NCBI RefSeq assembly: GCF_963676685.1 | Contig: NC_092346.1 | Coordinates: 28,582,001 to 28,646,000 of the forward strand | From: Mytilus edulis | Lineage: Eukaryota | DNA: 64,000 nucleotides | Direction: 5' to 3' | Part shown: piece after piece, positions 17,475 through 64,000 of the stretch | Layout of the letters: each line of letters opens with the position of its first letter | Position numbering within the stretch: position 1 is the stretch's first letter | Made by a program: the position numbers and the translations under genes | Notes under the pieces: model-generated | What the model saw: the letters and a program-made list of their open reading frames with translations, nothing else | The model's database searches: none | What the model was told of the DNA's origin: nothing

Positions 17475-18275
17475 CGCTGATAACAACTTATTGACAAACA
17501 CTCGGAACAACTTATTGGCGAAAATTGGTACCAATTTATTGACAAACACTAGTAACAATTTATTGACAAACACTAGTAACAATTTATTGACAAACACTAG
17601 TAACAATTATTGACAAACACGAGTAACAATTATTGACAAACACGGGTAACTACTTACTGACAAACACGGATATCAACTTATTGACAAACACGAGAAACAA
17701 CTTATTGACAAATACTCGGATATTGACAAATACTAGGAACAACTTATTGACTAACACGGGTAACAACTTATGGACAGACAATGGTGTGTACTCAAAACAA
17801 GATTGGTACAAATTATTGCCAAACTCTTGGAACAACCTATTAACTTAAACATTGAACAACTTTTAGCCAAATATTAGTTTTGACTTATTGGCAAACACTG
17901 GTAACAACTTTTTAACTTATGGAACCTTAACAGACACCAGAAACAAGTTATTTACGCCCAATAAATAAACAAACACTGGTAACAACTTATCAATACATAG
18001 TAAATTAGCAAACTATAAAACAACTTATTAAAACACAATAAATTAACAAACACTGGTATCAACTTCTGAACAAACCCAATAAGTTAACAAAAGTCTGACA
18101 ACTTCTTGACGAACATATTACAACTTATTAGCCGTCATCACACAGAAAAGGGAGATAACTATATGAAAACTGCAGGCTGCGCTGTTACCATTGACAAATG
18201 AAACATCTTTTGGAACAACTTTCTGACAAACACAGTGAACAACTTATTGACAAACACTTGAAACACTTTATTAAC
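17475..18275. repeat. Degenerate ~23-24-bp A/C-rich tandem repeat upstream of orphan gene copy 1 (homologous tract at ~61790-62185)
   Basis: Repeated ACAAC/TTTATTGACAAACACT.GTA units. Confidence 0.85.
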
Positions 18276-18360
18276 TACTCTTTGGTCAGTTGTTGTCTTT
18301 TGACACATTCCATTCCCAATTTATTTCCAATGAATACAACCAACGACACAAGTTAGACAA

Positions 18361-18594
18361 ACACTTAAATACTTTACAATTATTGGGCGTTATCACGCGA
18401 AAAAGGTACACTTAATTCTTTACAATTATTGGGCGTTATCACGCGAAAAAGGTACACTTAAACACTTTACAATTATTGGGCGTTATCACGCGAAAAAGGT
18501 ACACTTAAACACTTTACAATTATTGGGCGTTATCACGCGAAAAAGGTACACTTAAACACTTTACAATTATTGGACGTTATCACGCGAAAAAGGT
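18361..18594 (+). repeat. Five tandem copies of a 47-bp promoter segment (single copy in the other units)
   Basis: ACACTTAAACACTTTACAATTATTGGGCGTTATCACGCGAAAAAGGT starts at 18361, 18408, 18454, 18501 and 18548. Confidence 0.95.
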
Positions 18595-18639
18595 AGAAGC
18601 ATGTAGCAATGAATCCAAGAAAACTATGCGGCTACACTA

Positions 18640-18788
18640 GCTGTTACCATACTTCGACGTCATAAATATCCCCAATGCCAACGTTATTGTCGAAGTATCG
18701 GCAATACACTGCAGCAAGGAAGTTTTTAAAGTAAAAAGAATCATTCTATTCAGCTTTTTGAAGATAAGAAAATCGAAAGACAATTCTG
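18640..18788 (+). promoter_or_regulatory. Putative core promoter and non-coding exon 1 of the orphan gene (donor after 18788; equivalents at 31417, 43623, 62402)
   Basis: GACGTCA (CRE-like) next to CATAAATA (TATA-like) inside an inverted repeat, followed by a strong donor CTG|GTGAGT. This block is conserved in all four copies, including the diverged fourth. Confidence 0.55.
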
Positions 18789-19443
18789 GTGAGTAATGTT
18801 ATTTCACTTTTTTCAAGGAATGTACATTATTTATTTAGAAAAAACAAGCATAAAACAAAAAACCCGCATTTAAGAAATCGTGGTATGAGCTCCTATCAAG
18901 TCACGACAATTTATTTTATCGCTAATACTTATCTAACATATTAAAACGTCTAAGGTTTAAATAAATGAAGAATTAGTGTTTCCTCAACAAAACCTAGGTA
19001 TAATTTTGTTACTGTTGGTCATTTTTCGCAGGTCATATGCAATCTACTTATGGTCAGACTTCTTGAAAATGCTTATTTAGCCAAATGTATTTAAAACTAT
19101 ATAGCCTAACTACAGGAAAAAAGTTGGAAATACAAAGTGACTTGAAAACAAACACTGAACAGAAAACAAATGACCAACAGAAGCGACCACTGTGGTGAAT
19201 GCAATTTAATTTCTATAATGATTGAATGAGCGATGATTGTAACATACCTAGAAAAAAATCTTCTTCAATGTATATAAATATAGAAACAACTAAAAATATA
19301 TTCAGTGAAACCATATTTGATTACATTATTCAGCAGATTTCGAAATTTAAAAAAATGAAGGGGTAGGGAAAGGGGGTTGTGATACAAAAGATTTCACGAT
19401 ACGTTTTTAACTAATACTTGGTTCAACAATTAATAGGTTGACA

Positions 19444-22400
19444 ATGGCAATGTCCACCCAGCAAGAGGAGAGGGATCATTTTACCGTGTCCGGATTTTGT
19501 GAGGCCATTCTGTGTACAGCAGAATTCGAGTGTTCGCTTGATTTCATACTACACAAAAAGGCGTCTGAGGCAAAGAGGCTAATTTGGAAAATGGAATTAA
19601 GTATGTATTACCAATATCATATTCAAATCTTATTTAGATAAACAGGTCAATTATTCAATAAATATAGTCCGTTTTATTCTGTCACTGTATTTCGCTCTAC
19701 ACTCTGTTCTCAGTTTTGCTTCCTGTAATAATTCATTTGATAGTTTTCTCTTTAAATTCAAATTCTAGTTGTGTGAGGCACAACCCAAATGGGACAATTG
19801 CACAATACCAAAAAAATAACCTTCAGACATCTAAGGGTCAACATATGGCCTCCAATGAAAAACAAGAATATGTCAATAAGACAAAATTTGCAAATTTCTA
19901 TTCGGTCATCCAACAAGAGCGTAAAATTTGAACGGTTAACTGATTCTGTTGTAACAAGTTCAATATATTGAGAATAATTTCATGCAACATCTTCCTTAAA
20001 ATTTGAGCAGACCTTCCTTATTTTAAAATCTAATTGATTTATTTCAACAGAGAGAGAAAATAAGGAAGAGCAGAAATCAGAAACAGACGAGGATCAAACA
20101 GAAATTATGAATGAGGAAGAAAAGAAACCAGAAATGGATGTTGATATATCAACAGAGCAGAGAACAGGTAATTTTCTTTCATATTTTTACGCAATTCAAT
20201 TGTCACCACATTTGCTTGTTGTGTACAAAATAAGAAGATGTGGTATGATTACAAATGAGACAACTCCCCACTCGAGACCAACTATATATGTTACCATGTG
20301 GCCTTTAATAATGAGTGTCACCCATACCGCTTATTCAGTGTATCTTTAATGAAAGTTTTAAAAAATTTCTTCACTGAGTATGACAAATCTGAATGAAAAT
20401 AAGGACACCTACAGGTGCGGGAGTTTCTCGCTACATTGAAGACCCATTTGTGACCTTCGGCTGTTGTCTGCTCTATGGTCGGGTTGTTGTCGCTTTGACA
20501 CATTCCCCATTTCCTTTCTCAATTTTAAGTAAGCTATCATATCATCTCAGATGAAAGTTTATATTTTTAATTCTTAAGTTAGTTTGTGGCAATGATGGGA
20601 CTTATAAATATAAAGGCCGGAGGAAAAGCAGTAAAAGCTTTGTCTTTTTTCTTTCTTTCTAGGAATTATGATTACAAAGCCGATCCACGTGCAGAGAATT
20701 GGAAAGAACCCATTGGAGAATGCCGTCGGACATATAAATAAGGTACAATAAAGAATTAAGGGGACATTATAATGGGGTAGATGTTAATGGTAATAAGAAT
20801 CCAATTTCTAAGTAGAACAGTGATTTCATTGCTGTTCTTCATATTCACGATGAAATCTGTTCTCATTTTAAAAATTCCTTTAAATGTAACGTTGCAACAC
20901 ATTTTCTAAACGGTAAAAGCTAAAGTTGTTCCATTTTATTTTAGCCGAAGGATGTGCTTTCTTCGTGCTCATGTGCCTGATAGTCAGTTGGGTTTTGGGT
21001 GGTTGTAATGAAAATCAAGAGATTTTCAATGGTAAATTTGAGCTTTATGTATGCCGTAAATCTTATTTGTTTCAAATTTATACAACTTTTTAACATTTTG
21101 ATAATAAATTTTTCGTTTTTTTTTGTTTTTTAAACGTATCTTGAAATATATCTTTAGTGAGTAATCAATTTTTTTGCAACATTTCAATATCAATTTTACG
21201 TGTGCGTGTTGTGATATTTGAAAAATGCTGTATTATCATTATAGGATTCAGTTCAGACTTCTGTACTGAAAGGATCAATAAATGACAAAGAAGCGAAAAA
21301 GGACGAAAGGAAAATGAAAAGAGAACTTATGAAAGTGGAAAAAATAAGACGGAAAAAAGCTAAAGAAGAGGAAATGATTGTTAAAACACAGTTCAAAGCA
21401 ATCGAAAAGAGTAACCAAAGACAAAATAATGATGTGAAGTCAAAATGGAAGAAGGAACAAAAGAGGAGAAAGCAGATGAAAAAGATGGTTGAAAAGGGAA
21501 ATAGGAATTTAGAAAAAGGTATTTATTTCATAAATATGTCTACTTTCTTCAGTCTTCTTCTGACTTAACGAGTTTTGATGGTTATAGTTGCCGTAGGCGT
21601 AAGTATTTTCTAACTTCAACCAACCATTGCCAATGATGTATTAAACTCAATAAAAGAAATATACAAATTTCTAATTCAATTATGATCATATTTCACATTT
21701 TTATGATATAATGTATTATTGTCTAATTCAGAGTTCCATGTACATACACGATTCATGAAAAGTTTGTCTTATAGTTTTTAGTATAACAATATTTTAAATT
21801 TAAAGAAAAATACATATATTAGATGCGGGTGATAGGTACATTTAGGATCACTTCTTCAAAAAATAAACCCAGAGTGCACCGGGAGTTTAAAATCTTTTAT
21901 GAAAACATTATGAAATTTCTACATCCGTGTTTATCTTTACAGAAATGAAGAAGATCGAGAAAAAGAGAGTAAAGGACGAAAAGAAGAAAGTATTCCAAGC
22001 TATTGATGTTGCTCAAGAAAAGCAAAATGATTTAACAACAGTAAGAACAGATGAAGAAACAGAGAAAAATAAAGACGATAAAAATAAAACTATCGATATT
22101 GATGGGGAACAACAAAATGGTTCCAAAATAGTCAAAGCAAATGAAGAGACAGAGAATGACGAAGACGAGATGGAGACAACAGATCAAACAATCGATGTTG
22201 AGAAAAACAAAACAGAGAAAGAGACAGAGATAACCGAAGACGAGAGGGAGACAACAGATCAAACAATCGATGTTGAGAAAAACAAAACAGAGAAAGAGAC
22301 AGAGATAACCAAAAACGAGAGGGAGACAACAGATCAAACAATCGATGTTGAGAAAAACAAAACAGAGAAAGAGACAGAGATAACCGAAGACGAGAGGGAG

Positions 22401-23327
22401 ACAACAGATCAAACAATCGATGTTGAGAAAAACAAAACAGAGACAGAGACAGAGATAACCGAAGACGAGAGGAAGACAACAGATCAAACAATCGATGTTG
22501 AGAAAAACAAAACAGAGACAGAGACAGAGATAACCGAAGACGAGAGGGAGACAACAGATCAAACAATCGATGTTGAGAAAAACAAAACAGAGAAAGAGAC
22601 AGAGATAACCGAAGACGAGAGGGAGACAACAGATCAAACAATCGATGTTGAGAAAAACAAAACAGAGAAAGAGACAGAGATAACCGAAGACGAAAGGGAG
22701 ACAACAGTTCAAACAATCGATGTTGAGAAACCCAAAACAGAGAAAGAGACAGAGATAACCGTAGACGAAAGGGAGACAACAGATCAAACAATCGATGTTG
22801 AGAAAAACAAAACAGAGAAAGAGACAGAGATAACCGAAGACGAGAGGGAGACAACAGATCAAACAATCGATGTTGAGAAAAACAAAACAGAGAAAGAGAC
22901 AGAGATAACCGAAGACGAGAGGGAGACAACAGATCAAACAATCGATGTTGAGAAAAACAAAACAGAGAAAGAGACAGAGATAACCGAAGACGAGAGGGAG
23001 ACAACAGATCAAACAATCGATGTTGAGAAAAACAAAACAGAGAAAGAGACAGAGTTAACCGAAGACGAGAGGGAGACAACAGATCAAACAATCGATGTTG
23101 AGAAAAACAAAACAGAGAAAGAGACAGAGATAACCGAAGGACAGACAATCACCTGTGATAGTATTGGAAATAATGAAGTGAAAGAAAATTCCGAAAATGA
23201 TGCAAAAGACATTAAAATGAGTACCAAAAATGCCGGAAAGAAAACCACATTTGCTGCCAGAATCAGTGGATTCTTCCGATCCTTATTGTGTATCAAAAGA
23301 CAAAAGAAAAGCAAAGATGTGTGTTGA
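19444..23327 (+). CDS. Orphan acidic-repeat/coiled-coil protein, copy 1 (~666 aa). Exons 19444-19600, 20051-20167, 20663-20742, 21257 (or 21245)-21518, 21943-23327; 13 x 25-aa repeat
   Basis: All junctions AG/GT with matching phases (1,1,0,1), giving one ORF MAMSTQQEERDHF...GIMITKPIHVQRIG...KKEQKRRKQMKK...(ETEITEDERETTDQTIDVEKNKTEK)n...RISGFFRSLLCIKRQKKSKDVC*. AATAAA at 23376. No family recognised. Confidence 0.8.
20408..20526 (+). mobile_element. Short retroposon 3'-end insertion in intron 3, present in copies 1 and 2 (~33035-33153) and absent in copy 3
   Basis: ...GTTGTTGTCGCTTTGACACATTCCCCATTTCCTTTCTCAATTTT is missing from the equivalent site at ~45255. The same family occurs in reverse orientation at ~25150-25260. 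Confidence 0.65.
22145..23138 (+). repeat. Coding 75-bp tandem repeat, 13 units
   Basis: GAGACAGAGATAACCGAAGACGAGAGGGAGACAACAGATCAAACAATCGATGTTGAGAAAAACAAAACAGAGAAA repeated in frame. Confidence 0.95.
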
Positions 23328-23774
23328 TGAACTAGTTATTTTCTAACAATTCTTATTTTTCTACACTATCTTCTTAATAAAAAGCCAAAATCATTGTTAT
23401 TTAGCCTTGAGGAACCTGTTTTATTTAGAGACTTTATTTGAGAATAAATCTAGTATTTTGTAACTGCTAGTATACTCCTACTTCAAAAGTTTGTGTCTCT
23501 TCTCTTTTTGTTGGTTTTTGTGTGTGTTTCATGCCGATCTTAAAAGGTCAAACTAAGATATGTGTTGATTAATATGTTTTATTCATCAAATGTTATCTTA
23601 TTAATGTTTTAATGTTTAATTTTCTTAACGAAAACCCAAAAAGCAAGGGTTTATATTTACTAGATAAACGTCTTAAGTACCATGCAATGCATATTTTTAC
23701 AACTTATTATTGCAGAAATCGTGCAAGTTCGCCAAACGAAATTGTCCTGTCGACGTGCTGGTGATAGAAAAAAG

Positions 23775-24727
23775 GTTCTGGTTCTGTTCTCCTATGTCCT
23801 GGTTCTGTTCTCCTATGTCCTGGTTCTGTTCTCCTATGTTCTGGTTCTGTTCTTCTATGTCCTGGTTCTGTTCTCCTATGTCCTGGCTCTGTTCTCCTAT
23901 GTTCTGGTTCTGTTCTCCTATGTTCTGGTTCTGTTATCCTATGTCCTGGTTCTGTTCTCCTATGTTCTGGTTCTGTTCTCCTATGTTCTGGTTCTGTTCT
24001 TCTATGTCCTGGTTCTGTTCTCCTATAACCTGGCTCTGTTCTATGTTCTGGTTCTGTTCTCCTATGTTCTGGTTCTGTTATCCTATGTCCTGGTTCTGTT
24101 CTCCTATGTTCTGGTTCTGTTCTCCTATGTTCTGGTTCTGTTCTCCTATGTCCTGGTTCTGTTCTCCTATGTCCTCCTATGTCCTGGTTCTGTTCTCCTA
24201 TGTTCTGGTTCTGTTCTCCTATGTCCTGGTTCTGTTCTCCTATGTTCTGGTTCTGTTCTCCTATGTCCTGGTTCTGTTCTTCTATGTTCTGGTTCTGTTC
24301 TATGTCCTGGTTCTGTTCTCCTATGTCCTGGTTCTGTTCTCCTATGTTCTGGTTCTGTTCTCCTATGTTCTGGTTCTGTTCTCCTATGTCCTGGTTCTTT
24401 TATGTCCTGGTTCTGTTCTCCTATGTCCTGGTTCTGTTCTCCTATGTCCTGGTTCTGTTCTCCTATGTTCTGGTTCTGTTCTCCTATGTCCTGGATCTGT
24501 TCTCCTATGTTCTGGTTCTGTTCTCCTATGTCCTGATTCTGTTCTCCTATGTTCTGGTTCTGTTCTCCTATGTCCTGGTTCTGTTCTCCTATGTTCTGGT
24601 TCTGTTCTCCTATGTTCTGGTTCTGTTCTCATATGTCCTGGTTCTGTTATCCTATGTTCTGGTTCTGTTATCCTATGTCCTGGTTCTGTTCTCCTATGTT
24701 CTGGTTCTGTTCTCCTATGTCCTGGTT
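23775..24727. repeat. 21-bp minisatellite, ~45 units, specific to unit 1
   Basis: (GTYCTGGTTCTGTTCTCCTAT)n. Only ~1.5 units at the equivalent sites 37557-37587 and ~48654-48686. Confidence 0.97.
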
Positions 24728-25646
24728 CAAAATCATTGATGCCCTACTGTTAATGACTAGAAAGCTATTATCTGTTTTCTTTAAATCGACATTGTTGTTA
24801 ACGCTGTTATCGGTTATCAATATTTTAAATTGACTGTAATCCTATTTGCTGACCTGTAAATAGAACTCCTACTGTCCCATTTTAAGATATATGAAAATAT
24901 GTTTACTGTGACGATTTTCGGGATAAAGACCCTTTTGCATGATCACCAAAATATAGTGTAAAATATTCAATACCTGTATAAAAAAGATGATGTGGTATGT
25001 TTGTCAATAGACACATTTCCAATAAGAAACCAAGGAAGTATGTGTAAACAACCATAATCTTGTACGACCTTCTATCATGACCCAAAAATCAAAATGTAAA
25101 ATGTTTTGCATAAAAATGGAAGTATAAATATAGAACAAAGGATTTTCCCGAATAAAATTGAGAATGGAAACGGGGATGTGTAAAAGACAACAACATGACC
25201 ATAGAGCTAGACAAAAGTAGAAGGCCACCAATGGGTTTTAAACAGAGCGAAAAAATACCGCATCCAGAGGTAAACTGGTCCGTCGTTCTATCTATAGCTT
25301 CGCATCGCAGTGTAGCGACAAGTGAACACAACAGGGGTCCAGTTTAATCCAGAGGCGGGCTTCAGACGGCCCTTACACAAAATGTAATCTAGTTCATTAA
25401 AAATGGATGTCACATTCAACTTCATTACCGTGATATAAATCAACTAAAATTTAACAAAGGCAAGAGGCTTCTGACTTTTGCCAGGCGCTAAGATGAGTCG
25501 GGATTAAACATGTTCTGTAAAAATCAGGCACAAATAAAGTTGATCAACGCAAACAATTAATCAGATGAGCCTGAACACTTTTTAGATGAGTTTAGATAAT
25601 AATTTCAGTGTTACCTAAGCATTCTGAATATTGTTTCTCTGACAAA

Positions 25647-26140
25647 GGAGTAGGTTCACTATTAAAGACCCCTTTTTTGCCCCAAAATATAGCAGTTTTA
25701 CAAAATTGTTAAAATGTAAACTTTTAGTCATTTATTGGATAGTAGAATGCTTCTGCTACATAAAAATGGGCGGTTTTTGACTATACAATGCACATATAGC
25801 ACCATTAAGTCATGCTAACTACTGAAATTTTCACAATTCTGGCAATTTAGTTAAATTTTAGACGGTTTCCATGTAAAACGAAAGTGGCCGCAACCGGATG
25901 CGACCACTTTCATTTTTGACAAAAACCATCTGAAAAGTGACAATTTTGGGCCTATTTGGTAGATTTATCATATATGAGCTTGAATCGGATCGCTTTTAAT
26001 GACTAAATTAGTTAAAATCTTTTACATAAATTAATTGAATCAAATGAAATAGACACTTATGTGTTTAAAAAGTGGTCAAAATCTTTCGTCAGATGACCCT
26101 GAAATTCGAGGCCAAAATCGGTCCTTACCGGACGTACTCC
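25647..26140. mobile_element. Spy-type non-autonomous DNA transposon
   Basis: GACAAA|GGAGTAGG...CGTACTCC|TTTGTACG; the empty site in unit 3 is GACAAATTTGTACG (49621). Insertion between AAA and TTT with no TSD is the Spy signature. Confidence 0.8.
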
Positions 26141-26803
26141 TTTGTACGAAACTGTAAATACTTTTCTTTTTATTCAACCAAATGAAACTCGGCCTTGTTT
26201 CTGTGCGTAAGAATTATGTGTCTTCATCAGATTACTTTGTGAACAATTTAGTGCTGACTAAAAGGATGACAATAGTAAATTGGGGTGGGGTGGAGGGGGA
26301 TAAGTAATAGGAAGGTCAAAGTGAAAGTTTTAAGCTTGGAATAGTTTTGAAATTCTAAAATTGATGGTAAAAAATTATTAGATGTAGATGTTCAAGAACG
26401 ATTTTATTACAAAATTTTACAATAAAAACATTTTCCAAGAGTGGAAGGGAATTTCCCGTAAGATTAAAAAGTTAAGAAAATTTAAAGCGTCTAGTCACTT
26501 GCTGTATCTTTACGATTATTTTCAACATAAAATTTTTGTCTGAACAGTTGTCATTTTTTTTTAAAGTTCGTAAGAACACTCAATACATATTTCACTATTT
26601 TATGGAAGGACAGAGAATGGAGACGAGATAACCTAGATAACACTGACAGAAATAAAAAAAATAACTTTTGCATTTTATAATTTCAAAATAAAGTGAGTTG
26701 TCAAGGATTTTTTTTTATAAAGAATTAAGAGGGAGGGGTTAAATGATGTTCCTACTTGTCTATATTTGTATATATTTCATGAATAAATATAAAATATGCC
26801 TTT

Positions 26804-29101
26804 AGAGCAATTTGGACTTGCCGTGTTGTCATGTGACAAATTTACCACTGACGAAATTCATCAGAGCAATTTAGACTTTCCGTGTTGTCATATGACATAA
26901 GCACTGACGGGATTCATCAGAGCAATTTAGACTTTCCGTGTTGTCATGTGACATATTTACCACTGACGAGATTCATCAGAACAACTTAGACTTGCCGTGT
27001 TGTCTTGTGACATATTTACCACTGACGAGATTCATTAGAACAACTTAAGACTTCCCGTGTTGTCATGTGACATATTTACCACTGACGAGATTCATTAGAG
27101 CAACTCAGACTTTCCGTGTTGTCTTGTGACATATTAACCACTGACGTGATTCATTAGAACAACTTAGACTTCCCCTGTTGTCATGTGACATATTTACCAC
27201 TGACGAGATTCATCAGAACAACTTAGACTTGCCGTGTTGTCATGTGACATATTTACCACTGACGAGATTCATTAGAACAACTTAGACTGGCCATGTTGTC
27301 ATGTGACATATTCACCACTGACGAGATTCATCAGAGCAACTTAGACTTTCCATGTTGTCATGTGACATATTTACCACTGACGAGATTCATAAGAGCAACT
27401 TAGACTTTCCATGTTGTCATGTGACATATTTACCACTGACGAGATTCATTAGAACAACTTAGACTTCCCGTGTTGTCATATGACATATTTACCACTGACG
27501 AGATTCATCAGAGCAACTTAGACTTTCCATGTTGTCATATGACATATTTACCACTGACGAGATTCATTAGAGCAACTTAGACTTTCCATGTTGTCATGTG
27601 ACATATTTACCACTGACGAGATTCATTAGAACAACTTAGACTTCCCGTGTTGTCATGTGACATATTTACCACTGACGAGATTCATTAGAACAACTTAGAC
27701 TTCCCGTGTTGTCATGTGACATATTTACCACTGACGAGATTCATTAGAACAACTTAGATTTTCAGTGTTGTCATGTGACATATTTACCACTGACGAGATT
27801 CATTAGAGCAACTTAGACTTCCCGTGTTGTCATGTAACATATTAACCACTGACAAGATTCATCAGAGCAACTTAGACTTGCCGTGTTGTAATGTGACGTA
27901 TTAACCACTGACGAGATTTATCAGAGCAACTTAGACTTCCCGTGTTGTCATGTGACATATTTACCACTGACGAGATTCATCAGAGCAACTTAGACTTCTC
28001 GTGTTGTCATGTGACATATTTACCACTGACGAGATTTATCAGAGCAACTTAGACTTCCCGTGTTGTCATGTAACATATTAACCACTGACAAGATTCATCA
28101 GAGCAACTTAGACTTGCCGTGTTGTAATGTGACGTATTAACCACTGACGAGATTCATCAGAGCAACTTAGACTTCCCGTGTTGTCATGTGACATATTTAC
28201 CACTGACGAGATTCATCAGAGCAACTTAGACTTCCCGTGTTGTCATGTGACATATTTACCACTGACGAGATTTATCAGAGCAACTTAGACTTTCCGTGTT
28301 GTCATGTGACATATTTACCACTGACGAGATTCATCAGAGCAACTTAGACTTTCCGTGTTGTCTAGTGACATATTAACCACTGACGAGATTTATTAGTGCA
28401 ATTTAGACTTTCCGTGTTGTCATGTGACATATTAACCACTGACGAGATTCATCAGAGCAACTTAGACTTTCCGTGTTGTCATGTGACATATTTACCACTG
28501 ACGAGATTTATCAGAGCAACTTAGACTTCCCGTGTTGTCATGTGACGTATTAACCACTGACGAGATTCATTAGAACAACTTAGACTTCCCGTGTTGTCAT
28601 GTGACATATTTACCACTGACGAGATTCATCAGAGCAATTTAGACTTCCCGTGTTGTCATGTGACATATTTACCACTGACGAGATTCATAAGAGCAACTTA
28701 GACTTCCCGTTTTGTTATGTGACATATTTACCACTGACGAGATTCATTAGAGCAACTTAGACTTGCCGTGTTGTCATGTGACATATTAACCACTGACGAG
28801 ATTCATCAGAGCAACTTAGACTTGCCGTGTTGTCATGTGACATATTTACCACTGACGAGATTCATTAGAGCAACTTAGACTTGCCGTGTTGTCATGTGAC
28901 ATATTAACCACTGACGAGATTCAACAGAGCAACTTAGACTTCCCGTGTTGTCATATGACATATTAACCACTGACGAGATTCATTAGAGCAACTTAGACTT
29001 GCCGTGTTGTCATGTGACGTATTTACCACTGACGAGATTCATCAGAGCAATTTAGACTTTCCGTGTTGTCTTGTGACATATAAACCACTGACGAGATTCA
29101 T
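26804..29101. repeat. 59-bp tandem array, ~39 units (unit 1)
   Basis: AGAGCAACTTAGACTTCCCGTGTTGTCATGTGACATATTTACCACTGACGAGATTCATC head-to-tail with no spacers. Confidence 0.97.
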
Positions 29102-52206: not shown

Positions 52207-52334
52207 TAACAGAAATAAAAAAAAAATAACTTTTGCATTTTATAATTTCAAAATAAAGTGAGTTGTCAAGGAATTTTTATAAAGAATTAAGGGGGAGGGA
52301 GTGAACGATGTTCCTATTTTTTTATATTTATATA

Positions 52335-53347
52335 TGTAGGACTCTAAAGTGCGATGGTACTCTAAAGTGCGATGGTCACGCTAAAGTGCGATGGTCTACG
52401 CTAAAGTACGATGTTGTCTCACGCTAAAGTGCGATGGTTGTTTGTTTGCTAAAGTAAGATGGTATATCACGCTAAAGTGCGATGGACCAATATGATAAGG
52501 TCGACGGTTTAAAACATTAAAATACATGGATTTAAAAAAAAAACTGGTCTATTTGCAAAAGCTAGAATGCTAAGGTGTAACATATGATTTATCATTTATG
52601 ATTTTATGGCTTTATGATTTATCGGTAATCTTAAGTGATAGTTTCTAAAATTTATTTTGAAGACCGACCACATTGTCGGAATACATTAAGTAACATTTAT
52701 TTGTACAAGGTGTTTTATTCTTGAATGCGAGAAAAAGTCAATATTCGTCAAGCTTTCTCTTTTCCGTAAAAAAGACATGTTATATTTTCCTCCACTGTAC
52801 AAACTATGTTTTAGCCGACAATTTATAATTTACGCTGAAAAACATGAACCTTTATTTTACTGACGTTACTTTTTAATAAAATCGAAAATATTTTTAAGGG
52901 GACCGCAATGTAAACTGAATTGTAAACAATAATTTCAGTGCATCCGTTCGCTGCCAATAGAAGCAGGATCTACGATACCTATATTCGTATACTATTTTCA
53001 ACCTATTTAGCATCTATAAAGTAAAATGGTTGACTGCAGGACACAAGTCCTTCTTCAAGCATCCGAAATAAATCAACACAGTTGCTTCAGCCGACGAAGC
53101 ACGGTTAGGTCTGAAATTAAAACATGGACATTTGGTGAATCAAATGTTCTTAATTTATGTTCCGGCATATACATTTTTGGTTTGTATAAACGACTGTTAA
53201 CGTCATAATCCAAGTACAATTCTCTCGTCTATACTTTCGCGGACCATCGCACTTTAGCGTATGGAGGAATCGTGCTTTAGCGTAGACCATCGCACTTTAG
53301 CGTGACCATCGTACTTTAGCGTCCCCATCGCACTTTAGAGTCCTACA
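52335..53347. mobile_element. Non-autonomous TIR element with TGT...ACA ends and sub-terminal tandem motifs (Ginger-like; classification tentative), specific to unit 3
   Basis: Perfect 23-bp TIR TGTAGGACTCTAAAGTGCGATGG; CTAAAGTGCGATGG repeated ~7 times on the left and ~5 times inverted on the right. Absent in units 1 and 2; no clean TSD. Confidence 0.8.
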
Positions 53348-53374
53348 TCATGAATAAATATAAAATATGCCTTT

Positions 53375-54689
53375 AGAGCAATTTGGACTTCCCGTGTTGT
53401 CATGTGACATATTAACCACTGACGATATTCATCAGAGCAATTTAGACTTGCCGTGTTGTCATGTGACATGTTTACCACTGACGAGATTCATCAGAGCAAT
53501 TTAGACTTGCCGTGTTGTCATGTCACATATTAACCACTGACAAGATTCATCAGAGCAATTTAGACTTTTCATGTAGTCATGTGACATATTAACCACTGAC
53601 GAGATTCATCAGAGCAATTTAGACTTGCCGTGTTGTCATGTGACATATTAACCACTGACGAGATTCATCAGAGCAATTTAGACTTGCCGTGTTGTCATGT
53701 GACATATTTACCACTGACGAGATTCATCAGAGCAATATAGACTTTCCATGTAGTCATGTGACATATTAACCACTGACGAGATTCATTAGAGCAATTTAGA
53801 CTTGCCGTATTGTCATGTGACATATTAACCACTGACGAGATTCATCAGAGCAATTTAGACTTTCCATGTAGTCATGTGACATATTAACCACTGACGAGAT
53901 TCATTAGAGCAATTCAGACTTGCCGTATTGTCATGTGACATAGTAACCACTGACGAGATTCATCAGAGCAATTTAGAGCAATTTAGACTTTCCGTGATGT
54001 CATGTGACATATTAACCACTGACGAGATTCATCAGATCAATTTAGACTTTCCGTGTTGTCATGTGACATATAAACCACTGACGAGATTCATCAGAGCAAT
54101 TTAGACTTCCCGTGTTGTCATGTGACTTATTCACCACTGACGAGATACATCAGAGCTATTTAGACTTCCCGTGTTGTCATGTGACATATTAACCACTGAC
54201 GAGATTTATCAGAGCAGTTTAGAGCAATTTGGACTTGCCGTGTTGCCATGTGACATATTAACCACTGACGGGATTCATCAGAGCAATTTAAACTTTCCGT
54301 GTTGTCATGTGACATATTAACCACTGACGAGATTTATCAGAGCAATTTAGACTTTCCGTGTTGTCATGTAACATATAAACCACTGACGAGGCATCAGAGC
54401 AATTTAGACTTTCCGTGTTGTCATGTGACATATTAACCACTGACGAGATTCATCAGAGCAATTTAGACTTTCCATGTAGTTATGTGACATATTAATCACT
54501 GACGAGATTCATCAGAGTAATTTAGACTTGCCGTGTTGTCATGTGACATATTAACCACTGACGAGATTCATCAGATCAATTTAGACTTTCCGTGTTGTCA
54601 TGTGACAAATTAACCAGTGACGAGATTTATCAGAGTAATTTAGACTTGCCGTGTTGTCATGTGACATATTAACCACTGACGAGATTCAT
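53375..54689. repeat. 59-bp tandem array, ~22 units (unit 3)
   Basis: Same monomer, with array-specific variants GCAATTT and TTAACC. Confidence 0.97.
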
Positions 54690-55315
54690 ATTTCTAATAA
54701 AACATACGAGGTGCTGCCAGCTTAAATTTGGTTTTTGAGATCTCAACCATCGACCTCGATATTGAATAAAAAAGAACCAGAAAGTCCAGCCAAGGACGTT
54801 TAGCCAAGGACGTCCTTGGTCCAGTTCAGAAAATCAGTATAGAAAAGGCCATGACTCTTTAATATCGGTATCATAGATAAAACTAACAACAACAAAAACA
54901 ACAATACAATCACGTTAAATAAATAAAAGGTTGACCAGTCTTTGATTGGCCGATGTGATGATACCGATTTTTAATATAGGCCGGAAGCTCTCGTTTCTTT
55001 TATGGTTGGCTTTGTTTCTGTAATCCTCAATTGTATTTTCTCTATATTTTAGCACATCATTTAGGCAATTTTCTCTATTATTTGTTTCTTTTAGCCATCT
55101 CATGATTCTTTGGTCCATTAGTATCTATTCCTTATATATATTTTATATTTTCAATTTTAAATGCAGACCAAAAATCTTTAAGTCCGTTTCAATATATATT
55201 TAAAAATAAAGATGTGGTACGATTGCCAACGAGACAACTATTTATAAGAGACAAAATGACATAGAAATCATAATTAACAACTATAGTTCATCGTATGGCC
55301 TTCAACAATGAGCTA

Positions 55316-56677
55316 ATATATAAAAAAGAAGATGTGGTATTATTGCCAATGAGACAACTATCCACAAAAGACCAAAATGACACAGACATTAACAACTATA
55401 GGTCACCGTATGGCCTTCAACAATGAGCAAATCCCATACCGCATAGTCAGCTATAAAAGGCCCCGATAAGATAATGTAAAACAATTCAAACGAGAAAACT
55501 AACGGCCTTATTTATGTAAAAAAAGAACGAAAAACAAATATGTAACACATAAACAAACGACAACCACTGAATTACAGGCTCCTGACTTGGGACAGGCACA
55601 TACATAAATAATGTGGCGGGGTTAAACATGTTAGCGGGATCCCAACCCTCCCCTATTCTGGGACAGCGGTATAACAGTACAACATAAGAACGAACTATAA
55701 AAATCAATTGAAAATGGCTTAACTCATCAGAAGGACAATTATACAAGTGAACGTGGCCGGTACTTATACATCCCGACACAAAAAGACACAATGAACAGAT
55801 CTGAGAGTACTCGCAGTTATCTGACAGCTAGTTCAAAGCCACTAACAACTAATAAAAAAATCATGGAACTGAGACTAAACTATCAATCCGTATACATCCA
55901 ACATCCAATGGATTTAGTGTCAGAGTCATCGATAGCCAGAGAAATACATGACCTTGTGCAATGCCAAGTTACAGGTATCGACAGATTGTAGATCCATGAA
56001 TATGTATATGCATATAACATACTAATAATATTTAGTTAGCTTTTAATTTACTGATAACACAATCAATATTTATACCAATAAAAACAATATTCAATGATCT
56101 AATTACAGTGTTGAATAGGTAACCTTTTAGAATAAGTTTATTTAAAGGAGCGACAAGTTTACATGGATCATTTCTAAATTTCCGGGCACGGTTAACAACA
56201 TTTCCGTAAAAATGAGGATATGCTATCCCGTTTGAAATAAGTTTTCTACAGGTACAACCAAACTTCAAAACCAAATCTTTATATCTATGGAAAAATTTAA
56301 TAAAGGTTTTAAGTAATTTATGGTAATGATATCCCTGGTTTAATAATTTACCAGTAATACATAGGTTGCGTTGGTTAAAATAAAAAACGTCACAACAGAC
56401 ACGGGTATAGCGAACAAGTTGTGAAATATAAACACCGTAAAATGGTGCCAAAGGAACATCACCATCTAAAAATGGAAAATTAACAATAGGGAACGAAAAA
56501 TCGTCTCTTTTGTCGTAAATTTTAGTGTGGAGTTTCCCGTTTAAAACCGAAATATCTAAATCCAGGAAAGGACAGTTATTACCGAATAAATTTGATTTAT
56601 TTAAAGTAAGTTCCTTGGGGTACATTTCCGCAGTATATTGAGAAAATTCTTGATTATTTATTTAACGAAAAAATATC
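55316..56677 (-). mobile_element. 5'-truncated Penelope-like retroelement (probably Naiad-type) nested in an older copy of the same family
   Basis: Absent in units 1 and 2 (empty site GAGCTAAGCCTATTCC). Carries the RT C-terminus plus a ~700-bp 3' UTR ending ...CATTGGCAATAATACCACATCTTCTTTTTT. Confidence 0.8.
56032..56660 (-). pseudogene. Reverse transcriptase C-terminal (thumb) fragment, Penelope-like
   Basis: NNQEFSQYTAEMYPKELTL...CPFLDLDI...TKIYDKRDDFSFPIVNFPFLDGDVP...YGVYISQLVRY.RVC. Truncated just downstream of where the YxDD motif would be; stop follows KLKAN. Confidence 0.8.
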
Positions 56678-58009
56678 AGCCTATTCCGCATATATGCAGA
56701 TATAAAAGACCCCGAAATGACGAATATAAAACAATTCAAACGAGAAAAAGAACGAAATAATTTAACTAAAATAATGAACGAAAAACAAATATGCAACACA
56801 CCAAGAAACGACAAGCACAGAATTACAGGCCCCTGATTTAGTACAGGTAATGGACATAAAAACGTGGCAGTGTTAAACATGAATGTGCATGGGAGCTAAA
56901 CCCTCCCCTTAACTGGGACAGTTGTTTAAAAGTACAACTTAAGAATAAAAGCAAAATCAGTTTAAAAGACTAACTCATCAGGTTGATTCAAATACTACAA
57001 ATATCTATCTAAAAAGATACAAAGTTGACGTGGCCGCATATTTGAATATTCCAACAACAGGGAGACACAAGTATAGAGCTGAGAATACCCGTAGTTACTG
57101 ACAGCTAGCTCAAACCTAGGCCAACTGATAATAAATGAAAAAAAATCAGGCATTCAAGACTAAATTATCAATCAGTACAGAGACATTTAACATCCAATGG
57201 ATTTAGTGTGAAGAATGTTATTTTAAAAAGCCTGAAACATATGTTGATGAAAAAATACCTGAAAGTGGTGCTAAAAACTTAAAGGGGATACGATACATAC
57301 AGTTGTAATACCTGTTGTAGTATGCATGTCGTGCTAAAATCAGCAACTATCTTAAGTCTACTAAATTACAACGGTAAACCAAAAGTAGTATTGCCACATT
57401 GATCTGTGTCCACACTTGTTATAGGATTTAATTTATTTTGCGGCGTCGATATCGTCATAATTCTTTATGATATAAAGAAGATGGGAAGAAACTTTGGACC
57501 ATAGTATGGTGGCCGGATGCGGCCATTTCGCCTTTTCGCGACGGTTTTTGTGTTTGTTCCTTTCAATTTGCAAACGCAAAATCGGGAAATTGAGAATTCG
57601 GGAAATTGAGAAATCAGGAAATCGGGAAATCGGGAAATTGGGAATTCGAGAAATCGAGAACTCAAGAAAACGTACAAAAGATGTTAGAAAGGGTATTTAT
57701 TTAATGGACATTTCAGCTTTCTTCGGGCTTCTATTAACTAAACGAATTTAGGTGCACGCCGTCGACACGACGAATAGTCTTCTTTTAAATTCAACACGTG
57801 TGACAATAAAGGAAAAAACTCAATGAGAGAAATGTATCAATTTTGAATTCTATCATCATATTTCACATTTTCAAAATTCAATCATGCATATGAAAACAAA
57901 ATTTCCCATATTTGTAGAGCGTTGATAAAATTAAAAACTACATCTACATGTAGTATGAAGCTCTAAAAAATTTACACACTGAGATGTTATGAAGTCAACA
58001 ATGTGCATA

Positions 58010-59929: not shown

Positions 59930-60084
59930 GATGTTCCCTTAATATACTAGAGGTCAGTACTTAAGACTCGATACAGATGAAAATATAGAATACACGAGAA
60001 AAATAAGCAAGATGCTCTCTCAAGTAAACTATTTAATTTGTGGTTGAAAAAACAAGTCAAAACACCGACCATTGAAAACAGTGT

Positions 60085-60680: not shown

Positions 60681-61789
60681 CGAATAAATGTTTTTACAAA
60701 TTCCAGCCACGAAATCAAAGTGTAAAATTCATACAAATAGCTTCTACTTTGAAACTTTCAAACCATTAACCAAATCAAATAAATGATATAAGGTGGTCGT
60801 ACATTATATCTGTGTCGGGGCATTGCACAATGTCGTAGTTTTCTCTGACTGTAAATGAATTCATTACACTAAATCTGTTGGATTGTGAATGCGTACTGAT
60901 TTGTATTTTAAATATCAATCAGTGTACACACTATGCATTTAAAGTTTAGTGTTAGATGCATATTTTTTTGGTTATAAGATATAAGAAGATGTGGTATGAG
61001 TGCCAATGAGACAACTCTCCATCCAAGTCACAATTTATAAAAGAAAACTATTATGGTCAAAGTACGATTCTCAACACATTAGTTGTTGTTTACAGTGAAC
61101 TAGCTGCCAGTAACTGTAACAACTCTCAGATCTGTACTAAGTGTCTTTTAGTTGTGGTGATGTATAAATACCCTGCAACGTTAACTCTGTGCTTTTTGTA
61201 ACATGTGTATTTTTATTTGCATTCATCAGAAAGGCATTCACATCAAAGCATGCACAAATGGAACAAGGGTGGTGGACGCCATAATGGATGACTGTGCATT
61301 GAAGGTTAATCCAAACCCTTGAATGTATATATAAAAAAATAAATGAAAGTTCTTCTAAAAAAGAGAAACACATATAGCCGGTAATATCTGATAAATATTA
61401 CTACTTGTAGCAATACATATCGCGCAAATTCAGCATAAAAGTACTAAAGTATCAGGAATCACACCAAACGATTATTATCCACATTGATATGTGTCCACAC
61501 TTGTTCTGTAATAAAATATCAGTATTTTGCGGCGTCGATACAGCATTCATATTTTTTTTATGATGTCAAGAACATATGGTCTACAACTGTAATTGACAGA
61601 GAAATCTTCAAACAGGAGAAATGTTCCGCAAAGCAATACGTATAATCAAATCAGCTAAATGACCCGGTGAAACTGTCTATACCCGGTCCCTTATAGAGTT
61701 CTTTCTTTTGAATAGTGATTTTTATCAATTTTTTTATTTAGTCTATGAAAGAAACTATGATAGGTGGGAGATTCCTTTAAAAGCTGGTA

Positions 61790-62470
61790 AGAACTAAATG
61801 ACCAACACTTTGAACAACTTTTAGCCAAATATAAGTTTTCCAAATGTCATTATGATAAAGAAACACCAGAAACAAGTTATTTACGCCCAATAAATAAACA
61901 ATCACTGGTATTATCAACACATAATAAATCAACAAACTAGGAAACAACTTATTAATACACAATAAATAAACAAACACTGGTGTCAACTTATTAACAAACC
62001 CAATAAAAGTCTGTGACATTACAACTTATTAGCCATCATCGCACAGAAAAGGGAGATAACAAAGAATCTGAGAGAAACTGCAGGCTGTGCTGTTACCAAT
62101 GACAAACACTTGGAAAAACTTTTTGACAAACACAGTCGGAAACTTATTGATAAGCACAGTGGACAATTTATTGACCAACACATTGCAATTTATTTGGCGT
62201 TATCACACAAAAAAGGTAGATACAGTGAATGTTAGAATTCTATGCGGCAGCGCTGTTGCCATACTTCGACGTCATAAATATCCCCAATGCCAATGTTCAT
62301 TGTCGAAGTATCGGCAATACGCTGCAGCGGAATAAGTTTTCAAAGTCTAGAAATTTATTCTATTCAGCTTTTTGAAGATAAGAAAATCGAAAGGCAATTC
62401 TGGTGAGTAATGTTATTTCACTTTATTCAAGTAATGCACTTTTCAATCAGTTATTTTTTTAGAAAGAACA
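61790..62470 (+). promoter_or_regulatory. Upstream region and non-coding exon 1 of a fourth, more diverged paralog (rest of the gene lies beyond the window)
   Basis: Aligns with 17850-18850, including TTCTATTCAGCTTTTTGAAGATAAGAAAATCGAAAG.CAATTCTG|GTGAGTAATGTTATTTCAC. Intron sequence resumes at ~63987 (CATAAAACAAAAA). Confidence 0.75.
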
Positions 62471-62488
62471 GCCATATTTAGAAAGAAC

Positions 62489-63984
62489 AATTCTAATATG
62501 ACGTGCTTCTTTAGCTTTGTAAAGAAACTATACTTTATTATCCAATCATAAAATTAGTTTGCACATGCGTATATTGGCTACGGCAGAAAAATGAATTTTA
62601 TCAAATTGGTATGCATTTAATGTATTCCATTAACTTAAAAAAAGTTTCAAACTCCAAAATGATACACATTTTGTTACTAATACTTTTACAATGACAACAA
62701 TGTGTTACAATTTCGACATATTTGACCTAGATACCGCAACGTCCATGTTGGCTACCCCTCCCTCTGAAAAACACGTTTCATCTATCCTGTTAAAAGGCAT
62801 GTATATAATAATTTCATTGAAACATATGATCTGACGATAAAATATAAAATAAGTATAGGTTATTAATTATAACTGTTGTACTGAAATGACAAAATTGTGT
62901 CATATTTATGAAAAATGGATTGACCCTAGCAGGGAATCGAATCCCATTCTATAAAAAAAAAAATAGGCGTAATTACCAATATACCACCAAGGTTTCCAAT
63001 CCATTTTACAAATGCAACAAGATTGTCACTCAGTATTAATTTTAATCATCATGTAATACAGAATTTGAAATCGTCGCAATTATTTGGACTTAAAAAAAAG
63101 TAAAATCACAAAAATACTGAACTTAGAGGAAGATCAATTGGGAAAGTCCATAATCTGAACATGGCAAAATCAAATAACAAAACGCATCAAAAACGAATGG
63201 ACAAAAACTGTCATATTCCTGACTTGGTACAGGCATTTTCAAATGTAGAAAATGGTGGATTAAACCTGGTTCTATAGCGCTAACCTTCTCACTTTAATGA
63301 CAGTCTCATCAATTTCCGATATTTTTACATTGATGCGTTAACCGCAAGTATAAATGAATTTCTGTCAAAGGGCCCCTCCTGTCGAGTCTCGAATGTCAGC
63401 AAAACGTTATCAAGGAATCCTCTATCAGATTTGAACATATTTACCAATGCTACAATGATCTACAATAACCGGCGGAACATTTACAATTAATTAAGTAAAT
63501 AAAGATCGACCTACCCGATTCTCCTTGTGCATCCACCGCCATTGACAACTGACTTGAAAATGTGCGTGTCAGAAATTGACCTCAAAGAAATGTATAACTT
63601 TTCTGTTATATTGTGACACAAATATTGTTTAAGTTAATAAATTTGATAATTTCTGTTTCAATTTTGAATTTTACAAACTTACAACTTTGCGAAATTAAAC
63701 TGGTTTGAACTAGTTGGATAAAAATCGACAGGGAGGTTGATGGAAGAGCCTACACAAATACAGTACACCCTATACACAGCGAACATAGAAATTACCGTAA
63801 TTGTCCTAATCAGAATCGAAATAATTGATGCCAGCTATACTTTATTTTAGTTTTAACATGGGTAGGCATTATATTCGTGTCATTTTAGCCCTCGCTATCG
63901 CTCTGGCAAAAATAATCACGAATATAACTGATGCCTACCCATGTTAAAACTACAATAAAGTATAGCTGGCATCAATTATTTCTT
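62489..63984 (+). mobile_element. Second member of the hairpin-ended TSD-less family, opposite orientation, with a nested repeat at ~63090-63340
   Basis: Begins ATTCTAATATGACGTGCTTCTTT.GCTTTGTAAA (the reverse complement of the 34810-34843 end). Ends GTCCTAATCAGAATC followed by the palindrome 63818-63982 and TT. Confidence 0.75.
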
Positions 63985-64000
63985 AACCATAAAACAAAAA

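What the first reader, a model, noticed from the sequence alone, without database searches (positions are those of the whole stretch)
18220..64000. Tandemly expanding orphan gene family: at least four paralogs encoding length-variable acidic-repeat proteins
Seen: three complete copies and the start of a fourth. Each complete copy splices (GT-AG, phases 1/1/0/1) into an uninterrupted 617-690-aa ORF that the six-frame track shows only as fragments. Introns and flanks have taken many insertions and indels, but none breaks an exon frame, and the 80-nt exon shows 5 synonymous versus 2 replacement differences between copies 2 and 3. I recognise no protein family. Inference: a lineage-specific, functional family diversifying at three levels at once (gene copy number, coding repeat number, promoter/array dosage), a pattern common in reproduction, immunity and biomineralisation genes.
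Basis: partly seen in the sequence, partly recalled or inferred. Interest (0 to 1): 0.8.

Follow-up and report, generated by a model that had tools for sequence, protein, structure and literature searches.

The report
Mussel-only charged-protein genes with expanding repeats
Three recent tandem duplicates, plus an older fourth copy, of a transcribed gene family found only in Mytilus mussels have each expanded one 25-amino-acid acidic unit to 11-14 copies; the genes are real, but their function is unknown and this kind of young, mussel-restricted family expansion is already described.

Summary
Window 18548-57720 is three ~12 kb tandem units, 94-98% alike. Each carries a gene with one non-coding and five coding exons, GT-AG introns in phases 1/1/0/1, and products of 670, 690 and 617 aa. 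The last exon holds 13.3, 14.2 and 11.3 copies of a 75-nt (25-aa, net charge -6) unit. The promoter and 5'UTR exon of a fourth, older copy lie at 61863-62436; its ATG falls 318 nt past the window end. RNA shows four of the five junctions. The genome is Mytilus edulis.

The family is larger than four: 14-25 loci on several chromosomes. Normal members are 270-390 aa with a single unit. A profile search of 1.84 billion proteins found 21 hits, and every named one is Mytilus. There is no Pfam or PDB match. No public protein of 253-805 aa carries the expanded array.

Copies 2 and 3 show purifying selection (dN/dS 0.14). Copy 1 has 12 private replacements against 1 silent change, some at family-invariant residues, and none of its letters appear in the RNA. 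There is no signal peptide, so a secreted or biomineralisation role is unlikely. Function is inferred only: an intracellular charged helical rod, a disordered polyanionic spacer and a basic Cys-bearing tail.

The parts
18548..31176 (+). Tandem unit 1 (gene copy 1 plus spacer)
   Evidence: Self-BLAST: 18548-21121 matches 31177-33748 at 98.4%.
31177..43382 (+). Tandem unit 2 (gene copy 2 plus spacer)
   Evidence: The junction of spacer end to the 47-nt element is the same at 31177 and 43383.
43383..57720 (+). Tandem unit 3 (gene copy 3 plus a longer spacer with extra insertions)
   Evidence: 29722-30762 matches 56678-57720 at 86%.
18361..18595 (+). 47-nt promoter-proximal element, 5 tandem copies in copy 1 only. 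There is one copy each at about 31177-31223, 43383-43429 and 62177-62218.
18672..18788 (+). Non-coding 5' exon of copy 1. A TATA-like ATAAATA lies just upstream. Equivalents are at 31301-31417, 43507-43623 and 62284-62402.
   Evidence: RNA joint 18787/8>19436/7 with GT..AG in X2 and X22.
19437..19600 (+). Coding exon 1 of copy 1 (ATG 19444). It encodes the conserved N-terminal motif.
   Evidence: joint 19600>20051, GT..AG. Strongest constraint in the gene: 5-7 silent versus 1 replacement change against the older paralogs.
20051..20167 (+). Coding exon 2 of copy 1 (acidic)
   Evidence: joints 19600>20051 and 20167>20663.
20663..20742 (+). Coding exon 3 of copy 1 (80 nt; conserved motif IHVQRIGENPLKNAVGH in the family)
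21245..21518 (+). Coding exon 4 of copy 1 (K/E-rich helix, net charge +17)
   Evidence: (joint 21518>21943). The E3>E4 joint was not seen in RNA.
21943..23327 (+). Coding exon 5 of copy 1, including the stop TGA at 23325-23327. AATAAA signals are at 23376 and 23443.
22143..23138 (+). 75-nt coding array of copy 1: 13.3 units of KETEITEDERETTDQTIDVEKNKTE
32064..37094 (+). Gene copy 2, coding exons 32064-32227, 32678-32794, 33291-33370, 34943-35207 and 35641-37094
35841..36905 (+). 75-nt coding array of copy 2: 14.2 units with one 6-nt in-frame deletion
44271..48059 (+). Gene copy 3, coding exons 44271-44434, 44885-45001, 45405-45484, 46127-46391 and 46825-48059
47025..47870 (+). 75-nt coding array of copy 3: 11.3 units
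61863..62436 (+). Upstream region and non-coding 5' exon of copy 4. Its coding exons lie beyond the window, at C3:28646318-28649229.
26804..29101 (.). 59-nt satellite in the spacer of unit 1 (39 copies). It is also at 39787-41323 (26 copies) and 53375-54689 (22 copies) and is private to this locus.
23778..24728 (.). 21-nt minisatellite, 45 copies, downstream of the poly(A) signals of copy 1 only

Best explanation
The window holds a tandem array of four paralogs of a protein family found only in the mussel genus Mytilus. Normal family members are 270-390 aa. They have a conserved N-terminal helical motif (about 50 aa), a short conserved motif (IHVQRIGENPLKNAVGH), a roughly 110-residue lysine/glutamate-rich helix, an acidic disordered segment with one 25-aa unit, and a very conserved basic tail containing a cysteine (FAARISGFFRSLSCIK..KK).

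Shown: in the ancestor of copies 1-3 the 75-nt unit became a coding minisatellite, and the roughly 12.4 kb unit was then duplicated twice. The mechanism is inferred to be slippage or unequal exchange for the array and unequal crossing-over for the unit. The copies now differ in unit number (13.3, 14.2, 11.3). They are mosaics produced by gene conversion, and they carry private minisatellite expansions in promoter, 3' flank and spacer.

Shown: family transcripts are spliced at the predicted sites. Copies 2 and 3 and the older paralogs are under purifying selection in the non-repeat parts. Copy 1 looks relaxed.

Inferred, with low confidence (about 0.35): the protein is intracellular. The K/E helix would be a rod, the tail would bind membrane (possibly through S-acylation) or calmodulin, and the acidic, threonine-rich array would be a disordered polyanionic spacer. 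Each added unit lengthens it by 25 residues and adds a net charge of -6.
For: Structure of the array. Splicing: one search shows joints 18788>19437, 19600>20051, 20167>20663 and 21518>21943, all GT..AG, with depth confined to exons in X2 and X22. Which copies are expressed: the letters seen in reads match copy 2/3, copy 3 and copy 4 variants. Genus restriction; there is no Pfam or PDB relative. Exon junctions agree with independent database models such as P0001 and P0003. Selection: copies 2 versus 3 differ by 8 replacement and 12 silent changes, dN/dS 0.14, P=3e-5; copy 2 versus copy 4 gives 0.34; copy 2 versus the C4 paralog gives 0.26. Mosaic structure: copy 3 is 77-93% identical to copies 1 and 2 over 19947-20900 and 96-99% elsewhere. 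Architecture: the AF2 model of P0001 has helix 134-246 at pLDDT above 90 and a disordered acidic part. Charges are E4 +17, array -79, tail +6. Exon 1 has no hydrophobic N-terminal core.
Against: The E3>E4 junction was not seen, and the new acceptor of copies 2 and 3 is untested. None of copy 1's private letters appear in the RNA. Differences among array units are mostly replacements (9 versus 2 in copy 1), which is what neutrality predicts, so selection on the array itself is not shown. No public protein set contains the expanded form. Tissue, localisation and binding partners are unknown, so the functional part is inference from composition and one low-confidence model. Divergence between copies (1-3%) is in the range of allelic divergence in mussels, so part of the copy count could be an assembly effect.
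Confidence: 0.72

Rival explanations
1. The three expanded copies are young, dispensable duplicates drifting towards pseudogenes. Their frames are intact only because they are recent and because a 75-nt unit keeps the frame automatically.
For: Copy 1 has 12 replacement versus 1 silent private derived change, including family-invariant residues (S24C, ED>DF, GENPLK>GKNPLE), and none of its letters appear in the RNA. Copies 2 and 3 lost the conserved DPVQNS start of exon 4. Unit variation in the array is close to neutral. The expanded form is not in any protein set. Mussel presence/absence genes are typically young and taxonomically restricted (PMC7653742).
Against: Transcripts with copy 2/3 and copy 3 letters are present and spliced. 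Copies 2 and 3 give dN/dS 0.14. There are no stops or frameshifts in about 2 kb of coding sequence in any of the three copies.
Confidence: 0.25
2. Assembly artefact: two or three of the units are alleles or haplotypes of a single unit, laid out in tandem by the assembler.
For: Units differ by only 1-6%, which is similar to mussel heterozygosity. The locus is full of tandem arrays that confuse assemblers. Different RNA runs show different copy variants.
Against: The same novel junction of spacer end to the 47-nt element occurs twice, at 31177 and 43383. The units have large private structures: the 21-nt x45 array, an extra ~940 nt in intron 3 of copy 2, and about 5 kb extra in the spacer of unit 3. 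Array lengths differ. No extra haplotig elsewhere in the assembly carries the array.
Confidence: 0.1
3. The proteins are nuclear or nucleolar polyampholytes resembling histone or protamine chaperones. The basic helix and tail would act as nuclear localisation or nucleic-acid binding parts, and the acidic array would bind basic nuclear proteins.
For: There are many K/R clusters (KRRK, RRKK, KRQKK) and a long acidic tract. RefSeq's automatic names for relatives (DNA ligase 1-like, NOP58-like) reflect this composition.
Against: No domain of those families is present. The most conserved part is a hydrophobic-basic tail with an invariant Cys, which is not a typical feature of such chaperones.
Confidence: 0.2
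4. A secreted acidic protein of shell matrix, immunity or fertilisation, in the direction the first reader hinted at.
For: It is an acidic, repeat-variable, lineage-specific, tandemly duplicated gene. One exon-1-like fragment sits inside the myticin antimicrobial-peptide cluster on C10.
Against: The N-terminus MAMSTQQEERDHF... is charged and has no hydrophobic signal core in any member. The C10 copy is a stray single exon merged into a chimeric gene model. No myticin-like sequence lies near the window.
Confidence: 0.05

Closest known systems
Uncharacterised Mytilus predicted proteins of the same family, for example 'DNA ligase 1-like' M. edulis P0001 (chromosome C4), LOC143069137 M. galloprovincialis (P0003) and 'cylicin-1-like' M. 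californianus (P0019)
   Same: They share the exon structure, the N-terminal motif, the IHVQRIGENPLKNAVGH motif, the K/E helix and the C-terminal tail. Identity to the window copies in the tail is 60-92%.
   Different: They are 270-390 aa with a single 25-aa unit, whereas the window copies carry 11-14 units and are 617-690 aa. Some relatives instead expand a 13-aa unit (NDESMNIEEKRSE) in exon 2. None is characterised.
[quoted passage not shown] 2020, PMC7653742)
   Same: The window genes are young, genus-restricted and duplicated, of unknown function, and sit in a structurally unstable region.
   Different: Presence/absence variation of this locus was not tested here. The extreme coding-array expansion is a feature of this locus, not of that class.
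Charged single alpha-helix (ER/K) or weak coiled-coil rods with disordered acidic tails, such as cylicin-, trichohyalin- and caldesmon-like proteins (resemblance from general knowledge)
   Same: A long K/E/R-rich helix is predicted with high confidence, with 13 i/i+4 opposite-charge pairs in 91 residues and only 9 of 26 hydrophobic a/d positions.
   Different: The helix is strongly basic (+17) rather than balanced. There is no sequence or domain match to any of those families.

Membership tests
DNA ligase 1, NOP58, cylicin, trichohyalin, golgin A6 (names RefSeq gives to relatives) | Presence of the family's Pfam domain (ligase catalytic, Nop, cylicin N-terminal, S100/EF-hand or golgin domains) | tested here: not met
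   hmmscan of all five exons and of nine full-length database relatives against Pfam-A at E<=1 or 0.1 gave no such family. The names reflect K/E-rich composition.
Myticin antimicrobial peptide precursors (PF10690) | Signal peptide plus Cys-rich myticin domain | tested here: not met
   Only the chimeric model P0020 has PF10690. Its family-like part is a single stray exon-1 copy at C10:45799547 inside the myticin cluster. The window exons have no match.
Secreted acidic shell-matrix or biomineralisation proteins | N-terminal signal peptide | tested here: not met
   Exon 1 begins MAMSTQQEERDHFTVSG, which is charged and has no hydrophobic core, in all members. This was judged by eye; no signal-peptide predictor was available.
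IQ calmodulin-binding motif (PF00612) | Match to the IQxxxRGxxxR profile in the conserved tail | tested here: inconclusive
   No Pfam hit at E<=1. The tail has I..(S/Q)...R spacing that resembles the motif, closest in P0023 (IQAFLRIFSCNK). Short motifs are poorly detected by profiles.
Mytilus-restricted family defined here (alignments A1 and A2) | N-terminal motif GFCEAILSTAEFECSLEDIL, motif IHVQRIGENPLKNAVGH, K/E helix, tail FAARISGFFRSLSCIK, and five coding exons in phases 1/1/0/1 | tested here: met
   All are present in copies 1-3, with departures. Copy 1 changes S>C, ED>DF and GENPLK>GKNPLE. Copies 2 and 3 lack the DPVQNS start of exon 4.
Charged single alpha-helix (ER/K) domain | Long helix with dense i/i+4 E-K/R pairs, few hydrophobic core positions, stable as a monomer | tested here: inconclusive
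   AF2 gives helix 134-246 at pLDDT above 90, with 0.14 opposite-charge i/i+4 pairs per residue and 9 of 26 a/d positions hydrophobic. The monomeric state cannot be tested with these tools.

The most novel reading that the evidence does not exclude
The 25-aa unit array is a selected, copy-number-variable 'ruler' or charge module. Mussels would carry different numbers of genes and units (presence/absence and array-length polymorphism), tuning the length and charge of a membrane-tethered scaffold. That would make this a rare animal example of adaptive coding-minisatellite variation in a genus-specific gene family.
Probability: 0.1. Interest if true: 0.65.

Novelty: new variant of a known kind. 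Interest (0 to 1): 0.4.

Why it matters
The locus gives a well-resolved example of how a genus-restricted gene family diversifies. Unit duplication, gene conversion, a replaced splice acceptor and a coding minisatellite that triples protein length have all occurred within a few percent of sequence divergence. The expanded genes are missing from public protein sets in the length range searched (253-805 aa), so annotation of this mussel genome may be incomplete here. If array length or copy number varies among individuals and is selected, the locus would be a tractable case for studying presence/absence variation in mussels. Without a tissue or a function, it remains a typical young mussel family rather than a surprise.

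Tried and rejected
- Pfam on each exon separately and on full-length database relatives gave nothing real. The Glyco_transf_9 and Gp5_C 'hits' to exon 5 have no passing stretch and are repeat artefacts.
- A PDB sequence search with the family profile found nothing at E<=1.
- The ESM Atlas gave no usable hit.
- Literature searches for Mytilus plus cylicin, and for six LOC identifiers, found no papers.
- Earlier scan notes searched by sequence and by words gave nothing.
- I checked by eye whether the N-terminal helix fits the A-kinase-anchor RII-binding pattern as I recall it. No register fits, so I dropped the idea.
- Hydrophobic-moment scan: neither the tail nor exon 1 reached my cut-off (muH 0.45, 18-residue windows), so 'amphipathic' rests on the pattern of residues only.
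- I did not run fold search. Only one long helix of the model is confident, and its matches would be generic.
- Spacer ORFs (29697-30014, 30398-30742, 25092-25343, 56035-56661) have no Pfam family.
Full-length comparisons used database proteins.
Full report
**1. What is in the sequence**

TRF and self-BLAST show that window 18548-57720 consists of three head-to-tail units: 18548-31176, 31177-43382 and 43383-~57720. They are 94-98% identical over most of their length.

Each unit contains a 75-nt tandem array: 22143-23138 with 13.3 units, 35841-36905 with 14.2 units, and 47025-47870 with 11.3 units. Each unit also contains a 59-nt satellite of 39, 26 and 22 copies. The window has no N runs.

From the sequence I derived the gene model. 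Copy 1 coding exons are 19437-19600 (ATG 19444), 20051-20167, 20663-20742, 21245-21518 and 21943-23327, with stop TGA at 23325 and AATAAA signals at 23376 and 23443.

All introns are GT..AG, and the phases are 1/1/0/1. The summed coding lengths are 2010, 2070 and 1851 nt, giving 670, 690 and 617 aa. I count 5 synonymous and 1 replacement change in its whole codons.

Exons were searched one by one, and all full-length comparisons used natural database proteins.

**2. RNA evidence**

Runs holding this stretch were found. In the RNA-like runs the share of sampled words was about 0.10-0.13, roughly what the exons alone would give.

Laying two contig runs and two raw-read RNA runs on 18600-22143 gave depth confined to the predicted exons in X2 and X22. 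The exception is a very abundant repeat element in intron 2 (20385-20622).

Spliced joints were seen at 19600>20051, 20167>20663 and 21518>21943. All four joints are GT..AG on the + strand.

The E3>E4 joint (20742>21245) was not seen. One X2 contig shows an odd, in-frame, non-canonical joint at 20743>21473.

I compared the 'other letters' in the reads with each paralog. The reads come from several paralogs:
- Copy 3-specific G at 20102.
- Copy 2/3-type A at 21321 and 21348.
- Copy 4-specific letters at 21355, 22003 and 22123.

None of copy 1's private letters were read (19513, 19542-44, 21293, 21336, 21351, 21424, 21430). The family, and at least the copy 2/3 and copy 4 types, are therefore transcribed and spliced. 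Expression of copy 1 is not shown.

The libraries look unstranded. The strand follows from the splice-site orientation.

**3. Organism and family size**

The window is G000:C3:28582001-28646000 in a 1.37 Gb assembly. Contig lengths of C3 (107,021,180) and C4 (100,079,844) equal those recorded for Mytilus edulis RefSeq proteins. The genome is therefore M. edulis.

Searching the genome exon by exon gave 25 matches to exon 4, 21 to exon 1 and 14 to the C-terminal tail. They lie on C3 (26.0-29.8, 36.2 and 42.7 Mb), C1, C4, C5, C10, C12, C14 and unplaced contigs.

The fourth array member has its coding exons at C3:28646318-28649229, just past the window end. Only its upstream region and non-coding exon (61863-62436) are in the window. 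It is older, at 82-89% identity, and has a single 25-aa unit.

The last exon of all other paralogs is open for 139-239 aa, against 424-497 aa here. The 75-nt array occurs nowhere else in the assembly apart from a 116-nt stray fragment on C6.

**4. Relatives elsewhere**

Word searches found only Mytilus proteins, from M. edulis, M. galloprovincialis, M. trossulus, M. coruscus and M. californianus. They are 270-390 aa and are either unnamed or carry composition-driven automatic names such as DNA ligase 1-like, cylicin-1-like, NOP58-like, trichohyalin-like and golgin A6-like.

Their sequences confirm the exon junctions independently.

The claim of an orphan family rests on absence of relatives, so I ran the HMMER profile search of 1.84 billion representatives with alignment A2. 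Only 21 proteins reached E<=0.001. Every one that carries a name is Mytilus, and the rest are short unnamed fragments from Logan and ENA.

Pfam, PDB sequences and the ESM Atlas gave nothing. No protein of 253-805 aa in the 5.8-billion-cluster collection carries the expanded array; the best query coverage was 18-35%. The three window genes are therefore absent from public protein sets in this form. Longer or fused gene models were outside that search's length range.

**5. Architecture**

The family alignments show five conserved elements:
- An N-terminal motif (..VSGFCEAILSTAEFECSLEDILDKKAAEAKR.VWKME).
- A short motif (IHVQRIGENPLKNAVGH).
- A K/E/R-rich segment.
- An acidic segment containing one TDQTI(D/N)V unit.
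- A nearly invariant tail (KKTTFAARISGFFRSLSCIKGQKKSKDVC).

AlphaFold2 on P0001 with the family alignment is confident only for one helix, residues 134-246 (pLDDT above 90). The acidic part is modelled as disorder. The N-terminal helices and the tail helix have low confidence.

By region in copy 1, exon 4 has net charge +17, the array has -79 (-6 per unit, with 5 Thr per unit), and the tail segment has +6. The helix has few hydrophobic a/d positions (9 of 26), so a charged single helix or weak coiled coil fits better than a classical coiled coil.

The N-terminus has no hydrophobic signal core in any member. Other family members expand a different unit (NDESMNIEEKRSE, in exon 2). Repeat expansion in acidic segments is therefore a recurrent trait of the family.

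**6. Evolution of the array**

Units within and between arrays are almost identical, so the expansion is very recent. Differences among units are mainly replacements (9 versus 2 silent in copy 1), about the neutral ratio. Selection on the array itself is not shown.

The results for the non-repeat parts:

| Comparison | Replacement / silent changes | dN/dS | P versus neutral |
|---|---|---|---|
| Copy 2 vs copy 3 | 8 / 12 | 0.14 | 3e-5 |
| Copy 2 vs copy 4 | 42 / 25 | 0.34 | 1e-4 |
| Copy 2 vs C4 paralog | 33 / 25 | 0.26 | not computed |

Exon 1 is the most constrained, with 5-7 silent versus 1 replacement change against the older paralogs.

Polarising changes with copy 4 and the C4 paralog as outgroups gives copy 1 twelve private replacements and one silent change. 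Several hit family-invariant residues: S24C, ED>DF by three adjacent substitutions, and GENPLK>GKNPLE. Copies 2 and 3 together have 4 replacement and 4 silent private changes (Fisher P=0.047).

Copies 2 and 3 share a derived replacement of the intron 3/exon 4 boundary. A new AG acceptor keeps phase 0, exon 4 is 9 nt shorter, and the conserved DPVQNS start is lost.

Copy 3 carries a tract (about 19947-20900) that is 77-93% identical to copies 1 and 2, against 96-99% elsewhere. Within it, copy 3 shares letters with copy 4 and the C4 paralog. This fits gene conversion or retention of an older segment.

The duplication unit begins inside the 47-nt promoter-proximal element. Copy 1 has five copies of that element, and copies 2, 3 and 4 have one each. 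Copy 1 also has a private 21-nt x45 array in its 3' flank. The 59-nt satellite is private to this locus.

**7. Interpretation**

Shown: this is a real, transcribed, genus-restricted family, in a tandem array formed by duplication of a 12 kb unit after a coding minisatellite arose. The copies have since undergone conversion and further minisatellite growth.

Inferred: unequal exchange or slippage as the mechanism. Also inferred is an intracellular protein whose basic helix forms a rod, whose conserved basic Cys-bearing tail binds membrane or calmodulin, and whose acidic array is a disordered polyanionic spacer of variable length. I put about 0.35 on that functional picture and about 0.2 on a nuclear chaperone-like role. 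A secreted role is unlikely.

Whether the expanded copies are maintained by selection is open. Copy 1 looks relaxed, and copies 2 and 3 have lost one conserved motif.

A haplotype mis-join cannot be excluded without DNA reads. It is disfavoured by the repeated novel junction, the large private structures in each unit, and the absence of extra haplotigs.

The general kind is already described for mussels: recently expanded, taxonomically restricted families of unknown function, often subject to presence/absence variation (PMC7653742).

**8. Limits**

- The tissue of the RNA runs is hidden behind codes.
- the one read-laying run was laid on copy 1 only.

Noticed in passing
window 9474-17194: A 7.7 kb array of a degenerate 31-nt unit (about 247 copies, 66% matches) with a higher-order period of about 1.1 kb and strong strand bias (AT skew about -0.6, GC skew about +0.3). 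It lies just upstream of the gene array.
   Followed up: no
window 20385-20622 (intron 2 of copy 1): A short interspersed repeat with very high RNA depth in all four runs (up to about 76,000 summed word depth in X1) and many loose ends, so it is transcribed from many genomic copies. It is absent or different in copy 3.
   Followed up: partly
window 20743>21473: One X2 contig joins the end of exon 3 to the middle of exon 4. The joint is in frame (skipping 76 codons) but has non-canonical ends (TA..AG). It could be an alternative isoform, a paralog or a contig artefact.
   Followed up: no
G000:C10:45756994-45813908: This is the myticin (PF10690) antimicrobial-peptide gene cluster. A stray exon-1-like copy of this family sits inside it at C10:45799547-45799717, and an M. 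galloprovincialis gene model (P0020) fuses the two.
   Followed up: partly
G000:C3:36175439-36175932 and C2322:2025-2362: Three and two tandem exon-1-like fragments of the family, without the other exons nearby in the hit lists. They look like dispersed exon fragments.
   Followed up: no
G000:C6:49002381-49002496: An isolated 116-nt fragment, 98% identical to the 75-nt coding repeat, on another chromosome.
   Followed up: no
G000:C3:42690572-42693823 (L015): A paralog whose exon 1 is split and carries a TAA stop. It is probably a pseudogene.
   Followed up: partly
window 56035-56661 (-): A 209-aa open frame in the spacer of unit 3 only, with an inverted partial copy at 60095-60540. It has no Pfam match and looks like a transposon remnant inserted after the duplication.
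   Followed up: partly
runs X6 and X13: Two fish-gut metatranscriptomes hold about 0.10-0.12 of the sampled words of this stretch, which suggests mussel transcripts from the fish's diet.
   Followed up: no
window 30599-30711, 42817-42914, 57579-57660: An 8-nt microsatellite (AAATCGAG, 10-14 copies) is conserved at the same spacer position in all three units.
   Followed up: no
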